The notes under the pieces: model-generated
Database searches by the model: none
What the model saw: only the letters and a program-made list of their open reading frames with translations
Told to the model about the DNA's origin: nothing
Shown here: piece by piece, positions 40,815-50,699 of the stretch
Numbering within the stretch: the first letter of the stretch is position 1
Layout of the letters: each line of letters starts with the position of its first letter
Source: Vitrella brassicaformis CCMP3155
Taxonomy: Eukaryota > Protista > Chromerida
DNA: 64,000 nt
Direction of reading: 5' to 3'
NCBI GenBank assembly: GCA_001179505.1
Contig: CDMY01000438.1
Coordinates: 12,320 to 76,319 of the forward strand
Made by a program: the position numbers and the translations under genes

Positions 40815-41647
40815 TCACAGGTTGCCCGCGAGCCAGTCGCCCGTCATCTCCAGGATGCCCTTATCCGGCCGCGCACCCACTTGCAGCAGCATGCCCAGCA
40901 CAGCCAACATCTGACACACACACACACTCGCAATAATCGATCAGACGTGTATGCCTTGAGTGCCTGACATACCGCGAGTCGTCCATGTTTGATCTCTGCG
41001 AGCGCCCAGTCTTCGCGAATTCCCTCGTCTGCGAGCCCCAGCGGGTCGAAGCCGAGATCGCCGGGCACTCTGGAGAACATGCCGCTCTTCTCCATCACCA
41101 CCTCGTTGCCCAATGACGCCAACTGATGGACCGATCGACGACACACAGTGACATCCATCCATCGACTCCTTTCCTGCTGTGTGTGNNNNNNNNNNNNNNN
41201 NNNNNNNNNNNNNNNNNNNNNNNNNNNNNNNNNNNNNNNNNNNNNNNNNNNNNNNNNNNNNNNNNNNNNNNNNNNNNNNNNNNNNNNNNNNNNNNNNNNN
41301 NNNNNNNNNNNNNNNNNNNNNNNNNNNNNNNNNNNNNNNNNNNNNNNNNNNNNNNNNNNNNNNNNNNNNNNNNNNNNNNNNNNNNNNNNNNNNNNNNNNN
41401 NNNNNNNNNNNNNNNNNNNNNNNNNNNNNNNNNNNNNNNNNNNNNNNNNNNNNNNNNNNNNNNNNNNNNNNNNNNNNNNNNNNNNGGGGGGGGGAGTACC
41501 TACCTGTGGGCGTGCTGATCCTGCGAGGAATCGTGTGTTGCCTGTTTGCACCAGCAGCCGCTCCTTCTCCGACATGTCGGTGATCCGCATCTTCATGCTC
41601 GGGTCCCACAGGAACTTGGCTGTGTTGAGCTGCAGATATCGCGCGCA

Positions 41648-41681
<34 letters not shown>

Positions 41682-42532
41682 TGGATAGAGAGAATGATCA
41701 CGGTGACTCACCTCGATCAGGGCGATGGCAATCAGGATCTGCATCAGACCGGCGGGCGGCATCTGCACACACACAAACGTACCACACACGGACCAATCCG
41801 TCCACACAGACAGCATCAGACAGACACCACGCCATGCACCACCACCCCACCTACCGCAAAGAGTGCCTTGAATGGGTTCATCTCGCTGAAGGCCGGCACG
41901 AACTCCAGCCCATCAAAGCCCGCGGGCTTCTGCACCAGCTCGGGCGCCAACAGACCCACAGCCGCCAACATGCACAGCCGACCGTGCTTCAGCTCGGCAT
42001 TACGGAGGAAGCCAACATCAGCTATCTTGCTCAAGCCCAGCGGGTCAAACCCTGCACGCACACACACACACACACACACACAGAACGCACCTCGTTGTGT
42101 TGCTCTCTGTGTGCGTGGCTGAGTGAGTGGGTCACTGACCGAAATCTCCGACGAGTGTCCCGTCGCCGATCTGTGGCTTAGCCACCCAGGGGAGGGCGAG
42201 AGATACGTCGGACGGCACACGGATCTGCGGCACATCCAGCCTCTCCCACACCTTCTGACCCTCACCGCCAGGACTCGGCTGCCGAGTGTAGTCGGCTGAA
42301 TCAAATCAATCCCACAGCAGCACAACACAACAAAACGCGCCCGGCCATATGTTCATTCCAACTGTGTACGCAGTTGTCGATATTGGATCGATGGCTTACG
42401 GAAGTCGACTCCTCTGACCTTGGCCTTTTGTTGCTGCTGCTTGCCCCTGGCCCTGGCAACCATCTCGAGGTTGAATGCATGGCTGACCGAGAGGGACAGA
42501 CCCACCAGCACGACTGACAGAAGTGACGCCAT
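40815..42532 (-). CDS. Light-harvesting complex (LHC) antenna protein with bipartite plastid-targeting leader
   Basis: Leader [20 protein letters not shown]. Helix 1 'FDPLGL...[14 protein letters not shown]', helix 2 '[10 protein letters not shown]', helix 3 'GFDPLGL...[10 protein letters not shown]|MLAVLG'. The gene spans the N gap. Confidence 0.93.
41186..41486. other. Assembly gap (run of N)
   Basis: 301 N bases inside the LHC gene. Confidence 1.
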
Positions 42533-43422: not shown

Positions 43423-44473
43423 GCGTTGATTGACGAGTCCAGTCCGCTGTATGCCATGGGATGGGTGTGCCCACCTGCCAGTGCGCCAGTGAGTGCCAGC
43501 AGGACGGCAACCACACGGGAAGTGACCACAGGGGTGGCCGAAGGGACGATGCTGTCGTGTGGGTGGATGCCATCGTGGTGGAAGAGGACATCTGGCTGAG
43601 CGATGAACACGACGCCAGCGAGAGAGCACAGAGCCGCCAAAGTGCACACGGCCGTCCACGGCTCACCCAGGACACACGAGGCAAGCTGATTGATTGATGA
43701 CATCCACCCACAGCAGCACAAGCATCAGAGTATCAAGTTCGTTCGAGTGCATACCCTGCCTGTGTGCTTAGCTTACCACAGCGGTGAAAATGGGTGTGGT
43801 GAAGAAGGCAGCTGATGCATCCCCGAGGGGCAGCTGCGATATGCAGAAGAAGAACAAGCCGATAGCACACGACCCGCACAACGCCCTGAGTGAGGACATC
43901 AGCAAACGCACCAGATAGATCTACGTAAGCGCACACGACACACAGCAGCTCAGCTCAGCCAGCGCCACAAACACCGGCTGACCTGACTGACCTGGCCACA
44001 AGTAGGTGTCTGATCTCTGGCAGTCCAAATGGCGATATCCACCTCCTCTCCACCACCATTTGCACCGCCAGACACGCGCTCCCACACACCAGCTCCGTCA
44101 GGCCCCTCGCCAGCAGCACATAGAACACGCTCGTCTTAGCAGCCGTCACCTTGACCAGCGTAGACGAGAGGGAGAACAACACCGCCGACACGCCGCAGAG
44201 CACCAGACCCGCCGCTCGCCTGCACAGACCGCCCTCTTCGCGTTTCCCTTCCGGCAGTGGGTCGTCATCTGACAGATGGTTGAGGGACGACAGCTCGGTC
44301 GTCAGCTTCGAGTAGGCGGCCTCGTGGGTGAATGCGATGAGTCGATGGCTGGGTACATCATGATGCCCGGCGGCAGAGTGTCCAACGTTTTCCTCTGAGC
44401 CGAGTGAGGCGTCTTTTGTGCTCGCTGCTGAAGCCCCGTAGACGGTGGGATGTACCGCAGCGCCGCTCACCAT
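42771..44473 (-). CDS. EamA/DMT drug-metabolite transporter (SLC35G-like, two EamA repeats)
   Basis: 'GLVLCGVSAVLFSLSSTLVK', 'LASCVLGEPW...LAGVVFIAQP', 'YTLVRRIG', 'WCLNRGLQIEKAG', 'LDVALAYILQ', 'WSVCGAALIV'. Confidence 0.9.
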
Positions 44474-44708
44474 CCCAGGGGCCAGTTCGGGTGCGCTGCG
44501 GCGCAGAGTGCCGGTTTTTCCTCAGATCTTCATCGAGGCCATACTCATGGTGCTGAAGTGTGCAGTAAGGATGCTGGAAGAAGGCCTGACGAAGCCGTCT
44601 TTTCTTCCACGCGATCACACCTGCGAGCTTGGCTCGCAGATCTCCAGGCTCGCTGCAGTTCTCATCGCTGAACGACGTCGATGTGTGGATGAGTGGCTTT
44701 CCATCGAG

Positions 44709-47362
44709 ATGGTCCAGATGGCAGCATGGGGACTGGCGCTCTTCATCTCTCACGCCCACGGCTTCCATCAACCATCGCCCATCTCACGACCACGTCCGTC
44801 ACGGCTCCATCACATCAGGCGGAAACACGTCAGCCTAAATGGATGAATGGAATGAGTTCACTGGGATGGATGGATGGATGGATGGATTTGTGCCTGCAGG
44901 TGCGCTCAGCTGTGGAGTCTGCTGGGCAGGCTGCTCAGCAGCAGCAATTGCAATTGCAAGATCTGCAACGGCTGATGGAAGAGCTGCATGCTGACGGCAC
45001 CACCGACAGGCAGTGGACCATCGATGACCTGCTGAATGCAGACGTGAGTGACCTCTCCCCGTCTGCACAGCAGATCCGTGACTCAAGGTGCGTGCGGGCT
45101 CCTGTAGGATCCCCATCCATCCATCCGTCCATCCTCCCGTGTGTGTGTGTGTGTGTGTGTGTGTGTCAGGTTTAGTGGTTGTGTCGAGAGTTCTGATGGG
45201 GAGAGGCAGACCGTCCAGCACACGCCCACCATCACCTACTCTCGCAAGGTGTTCATTCCGCTGACGCACCTCTGTCGCGATCGGTGCCACTACTGCACAT
45301 TCGCGCAGCCTCCCAAGGATGGTGAGAGGTGAGTGGAGTGGAAGGAGTCAGCCGGGGATGGCAACACACCAAACAAACGGATGGATGCCGGAAGGAACCG
45401 TGGTGTCTGTCGTCCGCTTGCTTGTCGTGTCGTGTGTAGGTGCTACATGACGCGTGACGAGGTACTGGATGTGGTGCGGGAGGGGGAGAGGCTGGGGTGC
45501 ACTGAAGCGCTCTTCACACTTGGTCAGCCACAGAAGAGAGGAAGAGTACCTGTGGTCAGGTGCCCATCTGTCCATTGTGTGTGTGTGTGTGTAGGCGATC
45601 GTCCCGAGACGAGGTGGCCGCAGGCGATGGAGGAGCTGCGCAGCATGGGATACACGTCGACGATTGAGTACCTCAGGTCGGTGGCGCCAAGACATCAGCA
45701 CACTCTCTCTGGGATGGATCTTGGTGTGTGTGGATGGATGGATGGATGTGTTCCTCCCTAGGGATTGCATGGCCATGGTGCTCACAGAGACCTCGCTCAT
45801 CCCCCACGCAAACCCTGGAGTGATCTCAGATGACGAGATGCTCGTCCTCCGTGACGTCAGTGCATCACAGGTGGGGTGGGTGACCAAACACACACACACC
45901 CCACCCACCCACCCACCCCAGCCATCCACGTTTCTGTGTTTGTGCAGGGCCTCATGTTGGAGTCAATATCAGACCGGCTGTGGGTGGAGAAGGGCCAGCC
46001 GCACTATGGCTCCCCCGACAAGCGGCCGGCAAGGCGACTGGAGACCATCGAGAGGGCCGGGAGGCATCGCGTGCCGTACACGACTGGTCTTCTGGTGGGG
46101 TTTGGCGAGACGAGGCTGGAGAGGCTGCTGTCCTTGGCGGCGATTCGCGAGCTGCACCAGCGATATGGACACATACAGGAGGTCATCGTACAGGTGAGTC
46201 GATATCAATATTGCCGGCACATGGAGCCACGCACCGTGTGTTTGTCTGTCTGTGCAGCCCTTCCGGGCCAAGGAGGGGACGGTGATGTCCTCAGCCCCCG
46301 ACTGCCCCCTTTCAGAGCTCCTCTGGACCACAGCCATCGCACGCATCATCATGCCGCCCTCCATCTCCATCCAGTCCCCACCCAACCTCTCACACCCACA
46401 AGACCTGCCGATGGTCCTGCGGTCCGGCATCGACGACTGGGGTGGGGTGTCGCCGCTCACAGCCGACTATGTCAACCCCGAGCGCCCCTGGCCGTCCATC
46501 GATCGGCTAAGGGAGGTGACGGAGCAGAACGGCTTCGCCCTTGTGGCCCGGCTGCCGTCTTACCCCATGTATGTCAGCGACGGTGTGTTGTTGGGGGAGT
46601 GGCACAGCGGGAGGGTCGCGAGGTCACTCCTGCGAGCAATGGATGGCACTGGGCACTCCAGGTGAGCATTGATGGACACTGACAACACGCCACCAGCGAC
46701 CACACACCTCCCCCCCTGACTCATTTGCGTGTCCCAAGGACGGAGGAGCCATGGTTTGCCGGCGATTCCGCCTCGTCCGTGCCCACAGATGGCCCAGACG
46801 CACCCTACCTACCCGGCGGCCGTCACCATCCACGATACGCGGACGCCCTCAGGCCTTTCGAGCAGCCGGTGCGGCAGCTCGTGAGCGGCCGAGACGATGG
46901 CGTGAGTGGGACCGAGCTGTCACTGTGGAGGGAGCAGATGCGCAATGTGCTGAGGAGGGAGGGGGTGTCCGACTGGGTGGCGGAGCTGCTGACACGCGCT
47001 CTATTGTCGCCAGGTAGACATGTGGATGAATGAATGAATGTACGAGCTTCCTTTCAGCAGGTGTGTGTGGTGGATTGTATATCAGAGATGGCGCGGGGTG
47101 AGAGTGGTCTGAGTGAGGGTGAGGCGACGTCGCTGCTCGAAGCACGAGGAAAAGATCTTGCAGCCATTGCCGCGGCGGCCGATTTACTGAGGTCGGTGAA
47201 CAGAATACACCGAAGACATCAACGTGCATTGGTGTGTGTGTGGTCTTCCCTCGATGGTCAGGCGAGTGGTGGCTGGCCACGGCGTGTCCTATGCCGTTGT
47301 GCGCAATATCAACTACACCAACGTCTGCTACTTCAGATGCCAGTTCTGCGCATTCAGCAAAG

Positions 47363-47394
<32 letters not shown>

Positions 47395-48751
47395 CCACAC
47401 ACCACACACCACACACCACACAGACGACACCCCTGCCCACAACCCTCCATCCATCCATCCATCAGGCAAGCTCAGCGAGGCCCTGAGAGGACAGCCATAC
47501 AACCTACCTCACGAGGAGATCCAGCGGAGAGTGAGGGAGGCGTGGGAGCGTGGGGCGACCGAGGTGTGTCTGCAGGGCGGCATACACCCCGACTACACCG
47601 GCCAGACCTACCTCGACATACTGCGGGCCGTCAAGGAGGCCGCCCCCCACACACACGTCCACGCATTCAGCCCTCTAGAGGTACCTGGGTGGGTGGCTAT
47701 GTCAGCATACAGTACATGGATGGATTGACACACAACACAACACGCGGCATTGTCTGTCGTCTCCGCATTGGCTGGCAGGTGCAGCAGGGCGCATCAACTC
47801 TCGGCATATCAGTGAGGGATTTCCTGACTCAGCTGAAGGAGGCCGGACTTGGGTCGCTCCCAGGCACTGCTGCAGAGATACTCGACGACGGTGTCCGTGC
47901 AGTGCTGTGTCCCGACAAGCTGTCGACCGAGCAGTGGGTGGATGTGGTGAGGGCGGCTCATGAAGTGGGCCTCAAGACCACCAGCACCATCATGTTTGGA
48001 TCGATGGAGGGCGCACAGATGCAGGCCAGACACCTGCTGCGGATTCGCGACCTACAGGCAAGCAGGACCGACGCAGCGAACACACTGCAGGCATCCGCCC
48101 GAGCGTGTGTGTGTGTATGCTTCAGAGGGAGACGGGCGGCATTACAGAGTTCGTGCCTTTGCCCTTTGTGCACCAAGAAGCCCCCATCTATCTCAAGGGC
48201 CGCGCACGCAGAGGCCCCACTTTCAGAGAGGTGGTGGCCCTTCACGCCGTGGCCCGCCTGGCCCTGCACCCCTACGTGACCAACATCCAGACGTCATGGG
48301 TCAAGAACGGCCCACTGGGTGCGTGGGTGGTGCTGCAGAGCGGCGCCAACGACCTGGGGGGCACTCTGATGAACGAGAGCATATCACGGGCAGCCGGGGC
48401 CACGCATGGACAGGTGAGTGAGTGGTCAAGGGACACGTGAGTGGGTGGATGGATGGATGGATGCAGGAGTTTGGTCCCCGTGAGATGGAGCAGTTGGTTG
48501 CATCTCTTCCCCTCGACGCCCCTCAGCAGCGGCGGACACCATGGCAGCGCACCACCCTCTACACGCCAGCATCGCAGGTCAGGCAGGACAGGAAGCACAC
48601 TGACGTATGTATGCACCATGGACCGACCATCGTGTCTGTGTATACATGTGTGTGTGCGCGCCAGGAGCGAGCACTGCGTGCCCTTGATGCGGCCCCATTG
48701 GCGCCTGTGGAGAATGCGCCGGCCAAGAAATACGAGCGCACGGCGGCGTAG
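44709..48751 (+). CDS. fbiC: Bifunctional FO (7,8-didemethyl-8-hydroxy-5-deazariboflavin) synthase, CofG-CofH fusion
   Basis: CofG '[24 protein letters not shown]', 'PHANPG', '[23 protein letters not shown]'. CofH '[23 protein letters not shown]', '[10 protein letters not shown]', '[12 protein letters not shown]', 'TEFVPLPF', 'NIQTSWVK', '[20 protein letters not shown]'. Two CxxxCxxC radical-SAM motifs. Confidence 0.96.
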
Positions 48752-49424
48752 ATTGTGTATGGTGTGTTTGCGGCAGTTCGTCTCATGTGTATGTGGGTGA
48801 TGTGTATCTAGCTGGATGGATGGATGGAAGCCGTGTGGCGTTTACGTGTATGCTGTCTGTATCTATAGGGACAATTTAAGTGAGTAGGGGGGTGGGACGG
48901 ACTGTTACGGGGTCATGCAATCATTCAAACCAGTGCTGTCTGTATACATGCGCTGGATGTCTGCACACGTCTGTGCACGAGCCTTGTGTGGTGTTGGCGG
49001 CCGCGTCACGACAGGCTACTCCTCTCAGTGCCGAGACTCCTGAGAGGAATGGCCTGTCAGATCGGCCTGCAACACCACGCAAGGCATATGAGAATCGCCC
49101 AATACACTCGCTGCCTATTCTTTCTTCTCTCCGTCAACAGTCAGTCATCCGATCACTGCAGCCGATGCTGTACACGCACTGCATGTCTGTCTGTCTGTCT
49201 GTCTGTACACGAGATATGAGATATCTCCTCGCACTCCATCCACGTTCCTACCATGCCCTTAAGGACCACCACGACACGATGCTCCAGCCAACGCTGAGGC
49301 CATTGGCAGGAACAGAATGTCGTGGCCAACCCCAACGCCACATTGCAAGGCGCATGGGAGGAAAGGCGACACACTCGTTCGATTCGTATGTCATTCTTCA
49401 CCACTACACTCGGTATGCATTGCA

Positions 49425-49861
49425 TCATTCTCTCTGCCCACTGCCCCGACCCCCAAGTGTCATGACGCCAGGCAGGAATGCGTTTCTGTCATAGTCTTCC
49501 AGCAGCTTGTCGTCCTCGTAGTCGACGAGACCCTGTAGCAGGGTGGCCAGTTGGAAGGTGAAGAACCCTTCCAGCAGTGGGAAGATGGGCAGCAGGTCCG
49601 GTTGCCGACTCCACACATACATCATCACACCGGGCACTAACAGCCTGCATGACACAACAAAACAAACAACGTCCACATATATTGGGAAAGGAGATGAGAG
49701 CATTCTTGGGTGGGTGGGTGGGTGGGTGGGTGGGTGGATTGCTCGCTCGTTTACCGACCGTATGGGTGTGTTGAAGAGGCGCTGCTTTTCGGCGCCGAGG
49801 GCCTCCACATACCGACCCAGCACCTGCACATACGCCAGACCTGCGCACACACATCCAACAC

Positions 49862-49892
<31 letters not shown>

Positions 49893-50699
49893 TGAGCCGA
49901 CGTGCTCTTTGGGCGCGGCGCATGTCATTCACGCACCGAATATGCCTCCAAACGCATAGCTGAGAGAGGGCTGGACTCCGACCAGGCCCCACTGGAGTGA
50001 GAAACCAACCACCAAGAGGAGCAGGAGGTCGCTGAGCAGCCGCGCCTTGCGCGCACTGTACACCAGCTGCTGGCGCGTCTGCTGCTCCTCTTTCTCTCTC
50101 TGCCGCCTCGCCTCGTCCGCCTGGCGCCTGGCGACCATCTCTTGCCTTTGTTGTGCATCTTGTGTCGGCCTCTCCGGGGCATCGATGGGTATACAGCTGG
50201 CAGTCTTGAGATCGTACGCCGCCTTGTTCTTCAGAACAGATGGCGACTGAGAGATAGAGACAGACAGGGTCCATGTCAGTCATGAGTGCACGCGAATGTG
50301 TTGGCTTGGCCAACTCCCACGTACCATGGTGAGTATGGCCTCTTCGCGCTTCTCCTGTCTTATTCTCTCGAGCTTGTCGGGTGCCAGTAAATAGAGAGGC
50401 CTCCCAAGCTCTTCACGCTGCAGATCCTCGGCACTCTTCCAGATGGGCTGACTGCCAGGCGCGCCGTACTCAGAGAAGCCGCCTCGCTCGTCGATGCCGT
50501 CAGCATCAGCAGCATCAGGGCCACCATTGTGTGTTGCATCACCGTGCAGGGCGTGCAGTGGCCTGTGTGTGCTGACGAGAGGCCGCCGGCGTGTGAGGGA
50601 TCTAAATGGCCGGCGGGGCGGCACGAGCAGCGGCGGCGCATGAAAGGCCGTCAAGGGAAGGGTCGTGGGCAGCGAACCGATGGCAAATGAGCCCGTCAT
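49425..50699 (-). CDS. Hypothetical membrane protein, paralog of 57025-58413
   Basis: N-terminus nearly identical to the 57025 ORF. TM segment 'LLVVGFSLQW...SY..GGI.G' is shared. Multi-exon, 3' end approximate. Confidence 0.6.

What the first reader, a model, noticed from the sequence alone, without database searches (positions are those of the whole stretch)
44709..48751. Archaeal/actinobacterial-type deazaflavin (FO) synthase with an apparent plastid-targeting leader
Seen: a complete CofG-CofH fusion with both radical-SAM motifs. Its N-terminus [40 protein letters not shown] looks like a signal peptide followed by a Phe-initiated, Ser/Arg-rich, acid-free transit peptide, the same design as the LHC leader at 42532. 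Established: FO is the F420 precursor in archaea and actinobacteria, and the 8-HDF antenna of photolyases in cyanobacteria and some green algae. Inference: a red-derived complex plastid in an apicomplexan relative makes deazaflavin, for photolyase antennae or an unknown F420-like redox role.
Basis: partly seen in the sequence, partly recalled or inferred. Interest (0 to 1): 0.8.

Follow-up and report, generated by a model that had tools for sequence, protein, structure and literature searches.

The report
Algal deazaflavin (FO) synthase gene
This is an expressed, 16-exon nuclear gene of a chromerid alga (an apicomplexan relative) for the two-domain enzyme that makes the deazaflavin FO; it probably carries a plastid address tag, and it is a new lineage for a kind of gene already known from green algae.

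Summary
Window 44709-48751 (+) is a 16-exon gene for a 950-aa CofG-CofH fusion (FbiC-type FO synthase). It has both CxxxCxxC radical-SAM motifs and 124 of 128 invariant FbiC residues. Spliced contigs in two public runs match the exon junctions. The transcript contig starts about 50 nt upstream of the proposed ATG, so the leader exon is in the mRNA.

The N-terminus looks like a bipartite plastid signal:
- an 18-aa hydrophobic signal-peptide-like stretch ending AHG, then Phe;
- then 27 residues with 7 K/R and no D/E;
- the same "SHA-F" junction in the LHC gene 2 kb upstream.
Localisation is inferred, not shown.

The closest protein is Chromera velia Cvel_6268, named "FO synthase" in UniProt (55% identical), so the window is probably Vitrella. 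In trees the two chromerid proteins are sisters. They sit in an unresolved three-way split with a green-algal clade and a mostly proteobacterial/Chloroflexota group, apart from the main actinobacterial group.

Chlamydomonas PHR1, a bifunctional FO synthase needed for photoreactivation, is the precedent. An antenna role for photolyases and cryptochromes is the most likely function. I found no evidence for F420. Verdict: new member of a known kind, moderate-low interest. Note s1-218699 reads this same stretch.

The parts
44659..44708 (+). 5' untranslated leader as seen in the transcript contig. It holds two upstream AUGs: 44681 (3 codons) and 44689 (71 codons, out of frame).
   Evidence: The start of the X6 contig was inferred from per-bin depth. 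The uORFs were computed.
44709..44828 (+). Exon 1, the 40-aa leader. Residues 1-18 are signal-peptide-like (44709-44762), Phe19 is at 44763-44765, and a basic, acid-free transit-like stretch follows.
   Evidence: 44709 is the first in-frame AUG of the observed transcript and has G at -3 and +4.
44900..45087 (+). Exon 2: the end of the transit-like stretch, a Gln-rich segment, and the start of the region shared with bacterial FbiC. Met66 is at 44975-44977.
   Evidence: GT-AG borders. The X6 depth in bin 44805-44985 (28.8) equals the value predicted from these borders.
45170..45328 (+). Exon 3, with the CofG radical-SAM motif CRDRCHYC at 45273-45296.
   Evidence: The junction at 45328/45440 is seen in the X6 contig.
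45440..46661 (+). Exons 4-8, the rest of the CofG domain: 45440-45522, 45595-45676, 45762-45870, 45948-46193, 46258-46661.
   Evidence: Junctions are seen as GT-AG joints in the X6 contig, and three of the four also in X1 contigs. NCBIfam CofG pieces match.
46739..47013 (+). Exon 9, the inter-domain linker, with no family match.
47086..48577 (+). Exons 10-15, the CofH domain: 47086-47191, 47262-47362 (motif CYFRCQFC at 47326-47349), 47466-47680, 47779-48057 (followed by the GC-AG intron), 48126-48413, 48467-48577.
   Evidence: Joints and contig pieces in X6 and X1. The 423-nt length check fits. NCBIfam CofH pieces match.
48665..48751 (+). Exon 16, the C-terminal tail and the stop codon (48749-48751).
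40844..42532 (-). Neighbouring LHC gene, used as an internal reference for a plastid leader ([19 protein letters not shown]|F...). It is interrupted by a run of N.
   Evidence: PF00504, E 5.5e-15.

Best explanation
This is a nuclear, intron-rich, expressed gene of a chromerid alga, most likely Vitrella brassicaformis. It encodes a bifunctional FO synthase. The CofH domain joins 5-amino-6-ribitylaminouracil and tyrosine, and the CofG domain closes the ring to give 7,8-didemethyl-8-hydroxy-5-deazariboflavin (FO, also called 8-HDF). Each domain uses its own [4Fe-4S]/SAM radical centre. The protein is made with a bipartite leader. A signal peptide takes it into the ER, cleavage exposes Phe19, and the basic, acid-free transit peptide carries it across the inner plastid membranes. 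In the plastid it meets its substrates (a riboflavin-pathway intermediate and tyrosine) and Fe-S cluster supply. FO then most likely serves as the light-harvesting antenna of class II CPD photolyase and 6-4/animal-like cryptochrome family proteins, as in Chlamydomonas. Shown here: gene structure, expression, domain content and conserved residues. Inferred: enzyme activity, plastid import and antenna use.
For: Gene model and splicing. The X6 contig of 4367 nt and X1 contigs carry the junctions with no base differences. NCBIfam piece sums are about 372 bits for CofG (cut-off 213) and about 399 bits for CofH (cut-off 374). The protein keeps 124/128 invariant FbiC columns and both Cys motifs. The closest protein is Chromera Cvel_6268, named 'FO synthase'. 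Leader: the best 9-mer hydrophobicity in the first 30 aa is 2.11, against 1.14 +/- 0.43 in 270 bacterial FbiC, of which 1 in 270 reaches it. A and G sit at -3 and -1, and Phe at +1. The next 27 residues have 7 K/R and 0 D/E. The LHC next door has the same SHA|F design. The conserved SRKVFIPLT motif starts at residue 127, against a median of 40 in 264 bacterial FbiC; most green-algal orthologues also carry N-terminal extensions. Literature: chromerids use a signal peptide + Phe + transit peptide and make riboflavin in the plastid (PMC6668581). Chlamydomonas PHR1 is a bifunctional FO synthase needed for photoreactivation (PMC6125616). Chromera has nine photolyase/cryptochrome-family homologues, including class II CPD and 6-4 groups, seven of them with Vitrella partners (PMC10739334).
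Against: No signal-peptide or plastid predictor (SignalP, ASAFind, HECTAR) could be run. The hydrophobic core is short (9 aa) and the n-region has no basic residue. Phe at +1 is reported as less conserved in Vitrella (PMC6668581). Two out-of-frame upstream AUGs precede the start codon. The Chromera model has only a weak, short hydrophobic N-terminus. Introns 1 and 2 were not listed among the joints shown and rest on depth arithmetic and GT-AG borders. The whole-protein NF006687 cut-off (1018) is not reached by the piece sum (about 878) or by the Chromera orthologue (996.7). Neither FO nor a client photolyase was examined here.
Confidence: 0.6

Rival explanations
1. The enzyme is the same, but it is not (or not only) in the plastid. 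Either the hydrophobic N-terminus is a plain secretory/ER signal, or translation starts at Met66 (44975) and gives a leaderless cytosolic enzyme. The 71-codon upstream ORF from 44689 ends in a TGATG overlap with the Met66 codon. That overlap could allow termination-reinitiation and hence two isoforms.
For: One search shows two upstream AUGs, with the uORF2 stop at 44973-44975 overlapping the ATG at 44975-44977. Met66 lies before the region shared with bacterial FbiC, which starts at about residue 78-87. The signal-peptide core is short. FO is needed by nuclear photolyases.
Against: AUG 44709 has the best context (G at -3 and +4), while both upstream AUGs have T at -3. The SHA|F design matches the neighbouring LHC. 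The substrate pathway is reported in the plastid (PMC6668581). A 71-codon open alternative frame in 60% GC DNA is not rare (my rough estimate is about 0.1), so the overlap may be chance.
Confidence: 0.2
2. FO is not only an antenna. It is extended to F420 or another deazaflavin redox cofactor used inside the plastid.
For: Some bacterial relatives are fused to CofC (PF01983 in P0118 and P0018), which shows how close FO and F420 synthesis are in bacteria.
Against: The window protein has no CofC domain, and its N-terminal exons match no family. A 2021 review states there is no evidence for F420 synthesis in eukaryotes (PMC8498797). The scan's notes on this genome hold no CofC/D/E or F420 entries, but that is a weak negative.
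Confidence: 0.07
3. The gene is bacterial contamination, a recent unexpressed transfer, or a pseudogene.
For: Its best-scoring relatives outside Chromera are bacterial FbiC at 53-57% identity.
Against: It has fifteen spliceosomal introns, sits between eukaryotic genes (an LHC 2 kb upstream), appears in spliced transcripts in two runs, has an uninterrupted 950-codon frame and keeps its catalytic residues.
Confidence: 0.01

Closest known systems
Chromera velia Cvel_6268 (UniProt A0A0G4HBX6, auto-named 'FO synthase')
   Same: A fused CofG-CofH protein of 947 aa, 55% identical over residues 65-937. It is the sister in every tree (99/97 support in the finished tree). A hydrophobic start is followed by Phe and a Ser/Pro/Ala/Arg-rich stretch.
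   Different: Only 55% identical, which is about as far as either protein is from bacterial FbiC. Its annotated N-terminus is shorter (conserved motif at residue 89 against 127) and may be truncated.
Chlamydomonas reinhardtii PHR1 and other green-algal bifunctional FO synthases (Cymbomonas, Botryococcus, Parachlorella, Closterium, Mesotaenium)
   Same: A nuclear-encoded fused FO synthase. Most carry an N-terminal extension beyond the bacterial start. PHR1 is needed for photoreactivation because it supplies the 8-HDF antenna (PMC6125616). The green clade is one branch of the unresolved three-way split that holds the chromerid clade.
   Different: The green-algal proteins carry simple transit-peptide-like extensions for a two-membrane plastid. 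This protein has a signal peptide + Phe + transit design for a four-membrane, red-derived plastid. Monophyly of all the eukaryote rows is not supported: 62 in the quick tree, and a polytomy in the finished tree. I did not have the Chlamydomonas sequence itself.
Bacterial FbiC (NCBIfam NF006687; Actinomycetota, Pseudomonadota, Chloroflexota)
   Same: The same two radical-SAM domains in the same order, 124/128 invariant residues, and 50-57% identity.
   Different: The bacterial proteins are about 790-820 aa, with no leader and a shorter linker. The window protein separates from the main Actinomycetota group at 98/99 support. The NF006687 whole-protein cut-off is not reached.
Split CofG + CofH of archaea and cyanobacteria
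   Same: The same chemistry. The domain models TIGR03550 and TIGR03551 match.
   Different: These are two separate proteins. All nine exon pieces that match a split-subunit model score lower on it (NF004884, NF005609) than on the fused model. They were not included in my trees.

Membership tests
Bifunctional FO synthase (FbiC / CofGH) | CofG-type radical-SAM domain with a CxxxCxxC cluster motif | tested here: met
   CRDRCHYC at residues 138-145. TIGR03550 pieces sum to about 372 bits, against a cut-off of 213. This is a rough sum over exon pieces.
Bifunctional FO synthase (FbiC / CofGH) | CofH-type radical-SAM domain with a CxxxCxxC cluster motif | tested here: met
   CYFRCQFC at residues 613-620. 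TIGR03551 pieces sum to about 399 bits, against a cut-off of 374. This is a rough sum.
Bifunctional FO synthase (FbiC / CofGH) | Both domains on one polypeptide, with CofG before CofH | tested here: met
   A single 2853-nt frame runs across 16 exons. Spliced contigs join the exons. The pieces match NF006687 in order, positions 65-811 of 849.
Bifunctional FO synthase (FbiC / CofGH) | Whole-protein score above the NF006687 equivalog cut-off (1018 bits) | tested here: inconclusive
   The spliced protein has no reference and could not be submitted whole. The piece sum is about 878 bits. The Chromera orthologue scores 996.7, just under the cut-off.
Bifunctional FO synthase (FbiC / CofGH) | Makes FO from 5-amino-6-ribitylaminouracil and tyrosine | not testable with these tools
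   This needs an enzyme assay or heterologous expression with an FO fluorescence or LC-MS read-out.
Bipartite plastid-targeting sequence of red-derived complex plastids | N-terminal ER signal peptide | tested here: inconclusive
   Only heuristics were available. The hydrophobic 9-mer AAWGLALFI scores 2.11, and 1 of 270 bacterial FbiC N-termini reaches that. Small residues sit at -3 and -1 (A, G). No SignalP was available.
Bipartite plastid-targeting sequence of red-derived complex plastids | Phe (or another aromatic residue, or Leu) at +1 of the cleavage site | tested here: met
   Phe19 follows ...SHAHG. The LHC neighbour has ...SHA|F. This depends on the assumed cleavage site.
Bipartite plastid-targeting sequence of red-derived complex plastids | Transit-peptide-like stretch: basic, hydroxylated, poor in acidic residues | tested here: met
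   Residues 19-45 have 7 K/R, 4 H, 8 S/T/P and 0 D/E.
Bipartite plastid-targeting sequence of red-derived complex plastids | The leader is part of the mature mRNA and starts at its first in-frame AUG | tested here: met
   The X6 spliced contig starts near 44659. The per-bin depths fit exon 1-3 borders. There is no in-frame AUG between 44659 and 44709. The 5' end is a contig end, not a mapped transcription start.
Bipartite plastid-targeting sequence of red-derived complex plastids | The protein is found in the plastid | not testable with these tools
   This needs reporter fusions or immunolocalisation.
F420 biosynthesis pathway | CofC/CofD/CofE (FbiD/FbiA/FbiB) present in the same genome | not tested
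   Only this 64-kb window was readable. The scan's notes hold no such entries, which proves nothing.

The most novel reading that the evidence does not exclude
Chromerids may be the first red-plastid (myzozoan/CASH) lineage known to make a deazaflavin. On this reading, an FO synthase from the same broad clade as the green-algal enzymes was refitted with a signal-peptide + Phe + transit leader for a four-membrane plastid. The photosynthetic ancestors of Apicomplexa would then have had plastid FO synthesis feeding 8-HDF-dependent photolyases and cryptochromes. An overlapping uORF that ends on Met66 could add a second, leaderless isoform.
Probability: 0.3. Interest if true: 0.45.

Novelty: new member of a known kind. 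Interest (0 to 1): 0.3.

Why it matters
FO/8-HDF synthesis in eukaryotes has been described for the green lineage: Chlamydomonas PHR1, other green algae and mosses. A chromerid copy with a complex-plastid leader extends it to a red-plastid relative of apicomplexan parasites. It also gives a concrete reason to test whether chromerid photolyases and cryptochromes use 8-HDF. The enzyme and its role are textbook, though, and the Chromera orthologue already carries the name 'FO synthase' in UniProt. The gain is in distribution and cell biology, not in mechanism.

Tried and rejected
1. Finding the window's own annotated protein. It did not appear in three word-index searches or among the 150 representatives. 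The organism name (Vitrella) therefore rests on the Chromera sister relation and on GC content of about 58-60% (PMC6668581).

2. Naming the unnamed sister clade P0122/P0384/P0017. The gene context (L081: GC 67%, GC3 86%, long spacers, in-frame upstream ATG) and an Ala/Arg-rich N-terminus on P0384 suggest a green picoalga. No named close relative turned up, and the ESM Atlas gave only bacterial clusters.

3. The C20 mixture-model 'careful' tree did not finish in two 300-s runs. I report its quick version and a finished LG+G4 careful tree.

4. The neighbour called an 'EamA transporter' in note s1-218699. Pfam on its open-frame pieces gave no EamA match even at E up to 10. The head-to-head layout is real, but the identity is not confirmed.

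5. Literature. No paper in the library links FO synthase or deazaflavin to Chromera or Vitrella. The supplements of PMC6668581 do not list the gene.

6. I used the costly all-against-all protein search early. Exon pieces cannot reach full-length relatives through the length-limited word search, and the spliced protein has no reference.

Full report
**What is there**

The + strand between 44709 and 48751 has no long bacterial-style ORF. It holds a string of short open pieces in changing frames. Nine pieces scanned first against NCBIfam match the bifunctional FO synthase model NF006687 in strict order, from profile position 65 to 811 of 849. The CofG models match the first half and the CofH models match the second half. 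Two further exons fill profile positions 132-194.

**Gene model and expression**

Contigs of four public runs were laid on 43900-49300.
- X2 carries unspliced, genomic-type contigs.
- X6 holds one 4367-nt contig, and X1 holds several shorter ones. These skip the stretches between the open pieces at GT-AG borders and show no base differences. They are therefore spliced transcripts, even though the runs are not labelled RNA.

From the listed joints, the contig pieces and a 423-nt length check, I fixed 13 junctions.

Introns 1 and 2 were not among the joints printed. They follow from unique GT-AG pairs that keep the frame. They also follow from the X6 depth per bin. With exon 1 ending at 44828 and exon 2 starting at 44900, the predicted depth in bin 44805-44985 is 28.8, and 28.8 was observed. 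The same arithmetic puts the 5' end of the contig near 44659.

The result is 16 exons, a 2853-nt frame and a 950-aa protein, with one GC-AG intron after 48057.

**Enzyme**

- Both CxxxCxxC motifs are present, at residues 138 and 613.
- 124 of the 128 columns invariant in 14 diverse FbiC proteins are kept. The four changes are conservative: A/V, G/S, A/S and V/I.
- Rough sums of the exon-piece scores pass the curated domain cut-offs. CofG reaches about 372 bits against 213, and CofH about 399 against 374.
- The sum falls short of the fused-protein cut-off, about 878 bits against 1018. The Chromera orthologue also falls just short as a whole protein, at 996.7.

I read this as a genuine FO synthase that lies somewhat outside the bacterial training set of that model.

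**Relatives**

A search of representatives with the longest exon (collected) gave a 947-aa best hit. This is Chromera velia Cvel_6268, UniProt A0A0G4HBX6, auto-named "FO synthase". It is 55% identical over residues 65-937.

That relation, window GC of 56-62% apart from one bin that holds a run of N, and the published 59.6% GC of Vitrella transcripts (PMC6668581) make Vitrella brassicaformis the likely source. I did not find the window's own annotated protein.

Profile and single-protein searches added named green-algal fusions: Cymbomonas, Parachlorella, Botryococcus, Closterium and Mesotaenium. A genome scan added 80 labelled bacterial fusions.

**Trees**

I built three kinds of tree: a quick LG+G4 tree of 107 rows, a quick C20/PMSF tree of 56 rows, and a finished careful LG+G4 tree of 56 rows. 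The careful tree shows:
- The window and Chromera proteins are sisters (99/97).
- They join three unnamed environmental proteins, P0122, P0384 and P0017 (97/95).
- This clade, a green-algal clade (100/97) and a bacterial group (Pseudomonadota, Chloroflexota and Gaiellaceae, itself weakly supported at 80/69) form an unresolved three-way split.
- That split is separated from the main Actinomycetota at 98/99.

A single clade of all eukaryote-like rows appears in one best tree, but with support of only 62.

The unnamed sister sequences look eukaryotic and green. Their contig has long spacers, GC3 is 86%, there is an in-frame upstream ATG, and P0384 has an Ala/Arg-rich extension. This is unproven.

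Split cyanobacterial and archaeal CofG/CofH were not in the trees. The ultimate origin therefore stays open. "Actinobacterial-type" is right only for the fused architecture.

**Leader**

The conserved SRKVFIPLT motif starts at residue 127, against a median of 40 in 264 bacterial FbiC. About 80 residues are therefore extra, and they match no family.
- Residues 1-18 ([18 protein letters not shown]) hold a 9-residue hydrophobic core with a Kyte-Doolittle mean of 2.11. Bacterial FbiC N-termini average 1.14 +/- 0.43, and 1 in 270 reaches 2.11.
- A sits at -3 and G at -1, and Phe follows.
- The next 27 residues have 7 K/R, 4 H, 8 S/T/P and no D/E.
- The LHC gene 2 kb upstream on the other strand (PF00504) begins [19 protein letters not shown], then F, then a basic stretch. 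This is the same junction.
- The Chromera orthologue starts MFLVINVTS, then F, then a Ser/Pro/Ala/Arg-rich stretch.
- Most named green-algal orthologues carry 50-100 extra N-terminal residues.

Published work shows that chromerids import plastid proteins with a signal peptide, a Phe at +1 (less strict in Vitrella) and a transit peptide. The same work places riboflavin synthesis, the source of the FO synthase substrate, in the plastid (PMC6668581).

I could not run SignalP or ASAFind. I put plastid import at about 70%.

**Start codon**

44709 is the first in-frame AUG in the observed transcript and has G at -3 and +4. Two out-of-frame AUGs lie upstream in weak context: 44681 (3 codons) and 44689 (71 codons). 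The longer upstream ORF ends in a TGATG overlap with Met66 at 44975. Met66 lies just before the region shared with bacteria. This may be chance, or it may allow a leaderless isoform. I list it as a rival and not as a finding.

**Function**

- The precedent is direct. Chlamydomonas PHR1 is a bifunctional FO synthase required for photoreactivation, and 8-HDF is the antenna of its class II photolyase and animal-like cryptochrome. The pathway is described as kept in the green lineage up to mosses (PMC6125616).
- Chromera has nine photolyase/cryptochrome-family homologues, including class II CPD and 6-4 groups. Seven of them have Vitrella partners (PMC10739334).
- An unchecked note from this scan reports a PHR2-like photolyase with a plastid-type leader elsewhere in this genome (s1-235956).
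- A 2021 review says FbiC fusions occur in bacteria and eukaryotes, and that there is no evidence for F420 in eukaryotes (PMC8498797).
- Some bacterial relatives are CofC-FbiC fusions. The window protein is not one.

The antenna role is therefore the best-supported reading, and an F420 role is unsupported.

**Novelty**

No paper in the searchable library links FO synthase or deazaflavin to chromerids, and I found no description of FO synthase in any red-plastid alga. My searches cannot show that it is absent from those lineages. The gene is a new member of a known kind. Its value is in extending the known distribution and in the clean bipartite leader.

Note s1-218699 is another reading of the same stretch. 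Its head-to-head layout is real: transcript contig ends lie at 44613 and about 44659. Its EamA label was not confirmed.

Noticed in passing
window 44681-44977: Two upstream AUGs lie in the roughly 50-nt 5' leader. The second (44689, frame +1) opens a 71-codon ORF. Its TGA stop (44973-44975) overlaps the in-frame ATG of Met66 (44975-44977) as TGATG, a layout known from termination-reinitiation. It may be chance.
   Followed up: partly
window 43955-44613 (minus strand) against 44659 (plus strand): The upstream gene is head to head with the FO synthase gene. Transcript contigs of the two genes end only about 45 nt apart (44613 and about 44659), so the shared promoter region is very short. Pfam did not confirm the EamA identity proposed in note s1-218699, even at E up to 10.
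   Followed up: partly
window 40844-42532 (minus strand): An LHC (chlorophyll a/b-binding, PF00504) gene with a signal-peptide + Phe leader. It is interrupted by a run of N (an assembly gap) around 41180-41500.
   Followed up: partly
window 48058-48125: Intron 13 is a GC-AG intron. It is confirmed by spliced contigs in two runs.
   Followed up: yes
window 44857-44897, 45109-45176, 45529-45890, 47358-47463, 48787-48967: These intron stretches hold (GGAT)n and (TG)n microsatellites that recur genome-wide. Contig depth there rises 10- to 50-fold, and many contigs from elsewhere join at these places.
   Followed up: no
P0118 residues 1-230; P0018 residues 1-270: Some bacterial relatives carry an N-terminal CofC (PF01983) domain fused to FbiC, giving a three-domain CofC-CofG-CofH protein of about 980-1016 aa. 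One such cluster has 239 members in metagenomes.
   Followed up: partly
L081 (JGI metagenome 3300020184) and L082: The closest non-chromerid relatives (P0122, P0384) come from salt-marsh-type metagenome contigs with 67% GC and 86% GC3. Gene spacing looks eukaryotic and the N-terminus is Ala/Arg-rich and transit-like. They may come from an unsequenced green picoalga.
   Followed up: partly
window 48752 to beyond 49300: The X6 transcript contig runs more than 1.4 kb past the stop codon. Either the 3' UTR is very long, or the unstranded assembly merged it with a convergent neighbouring transcript (minus-strand ORFs lie at 49425-50313).
   Followed up: no
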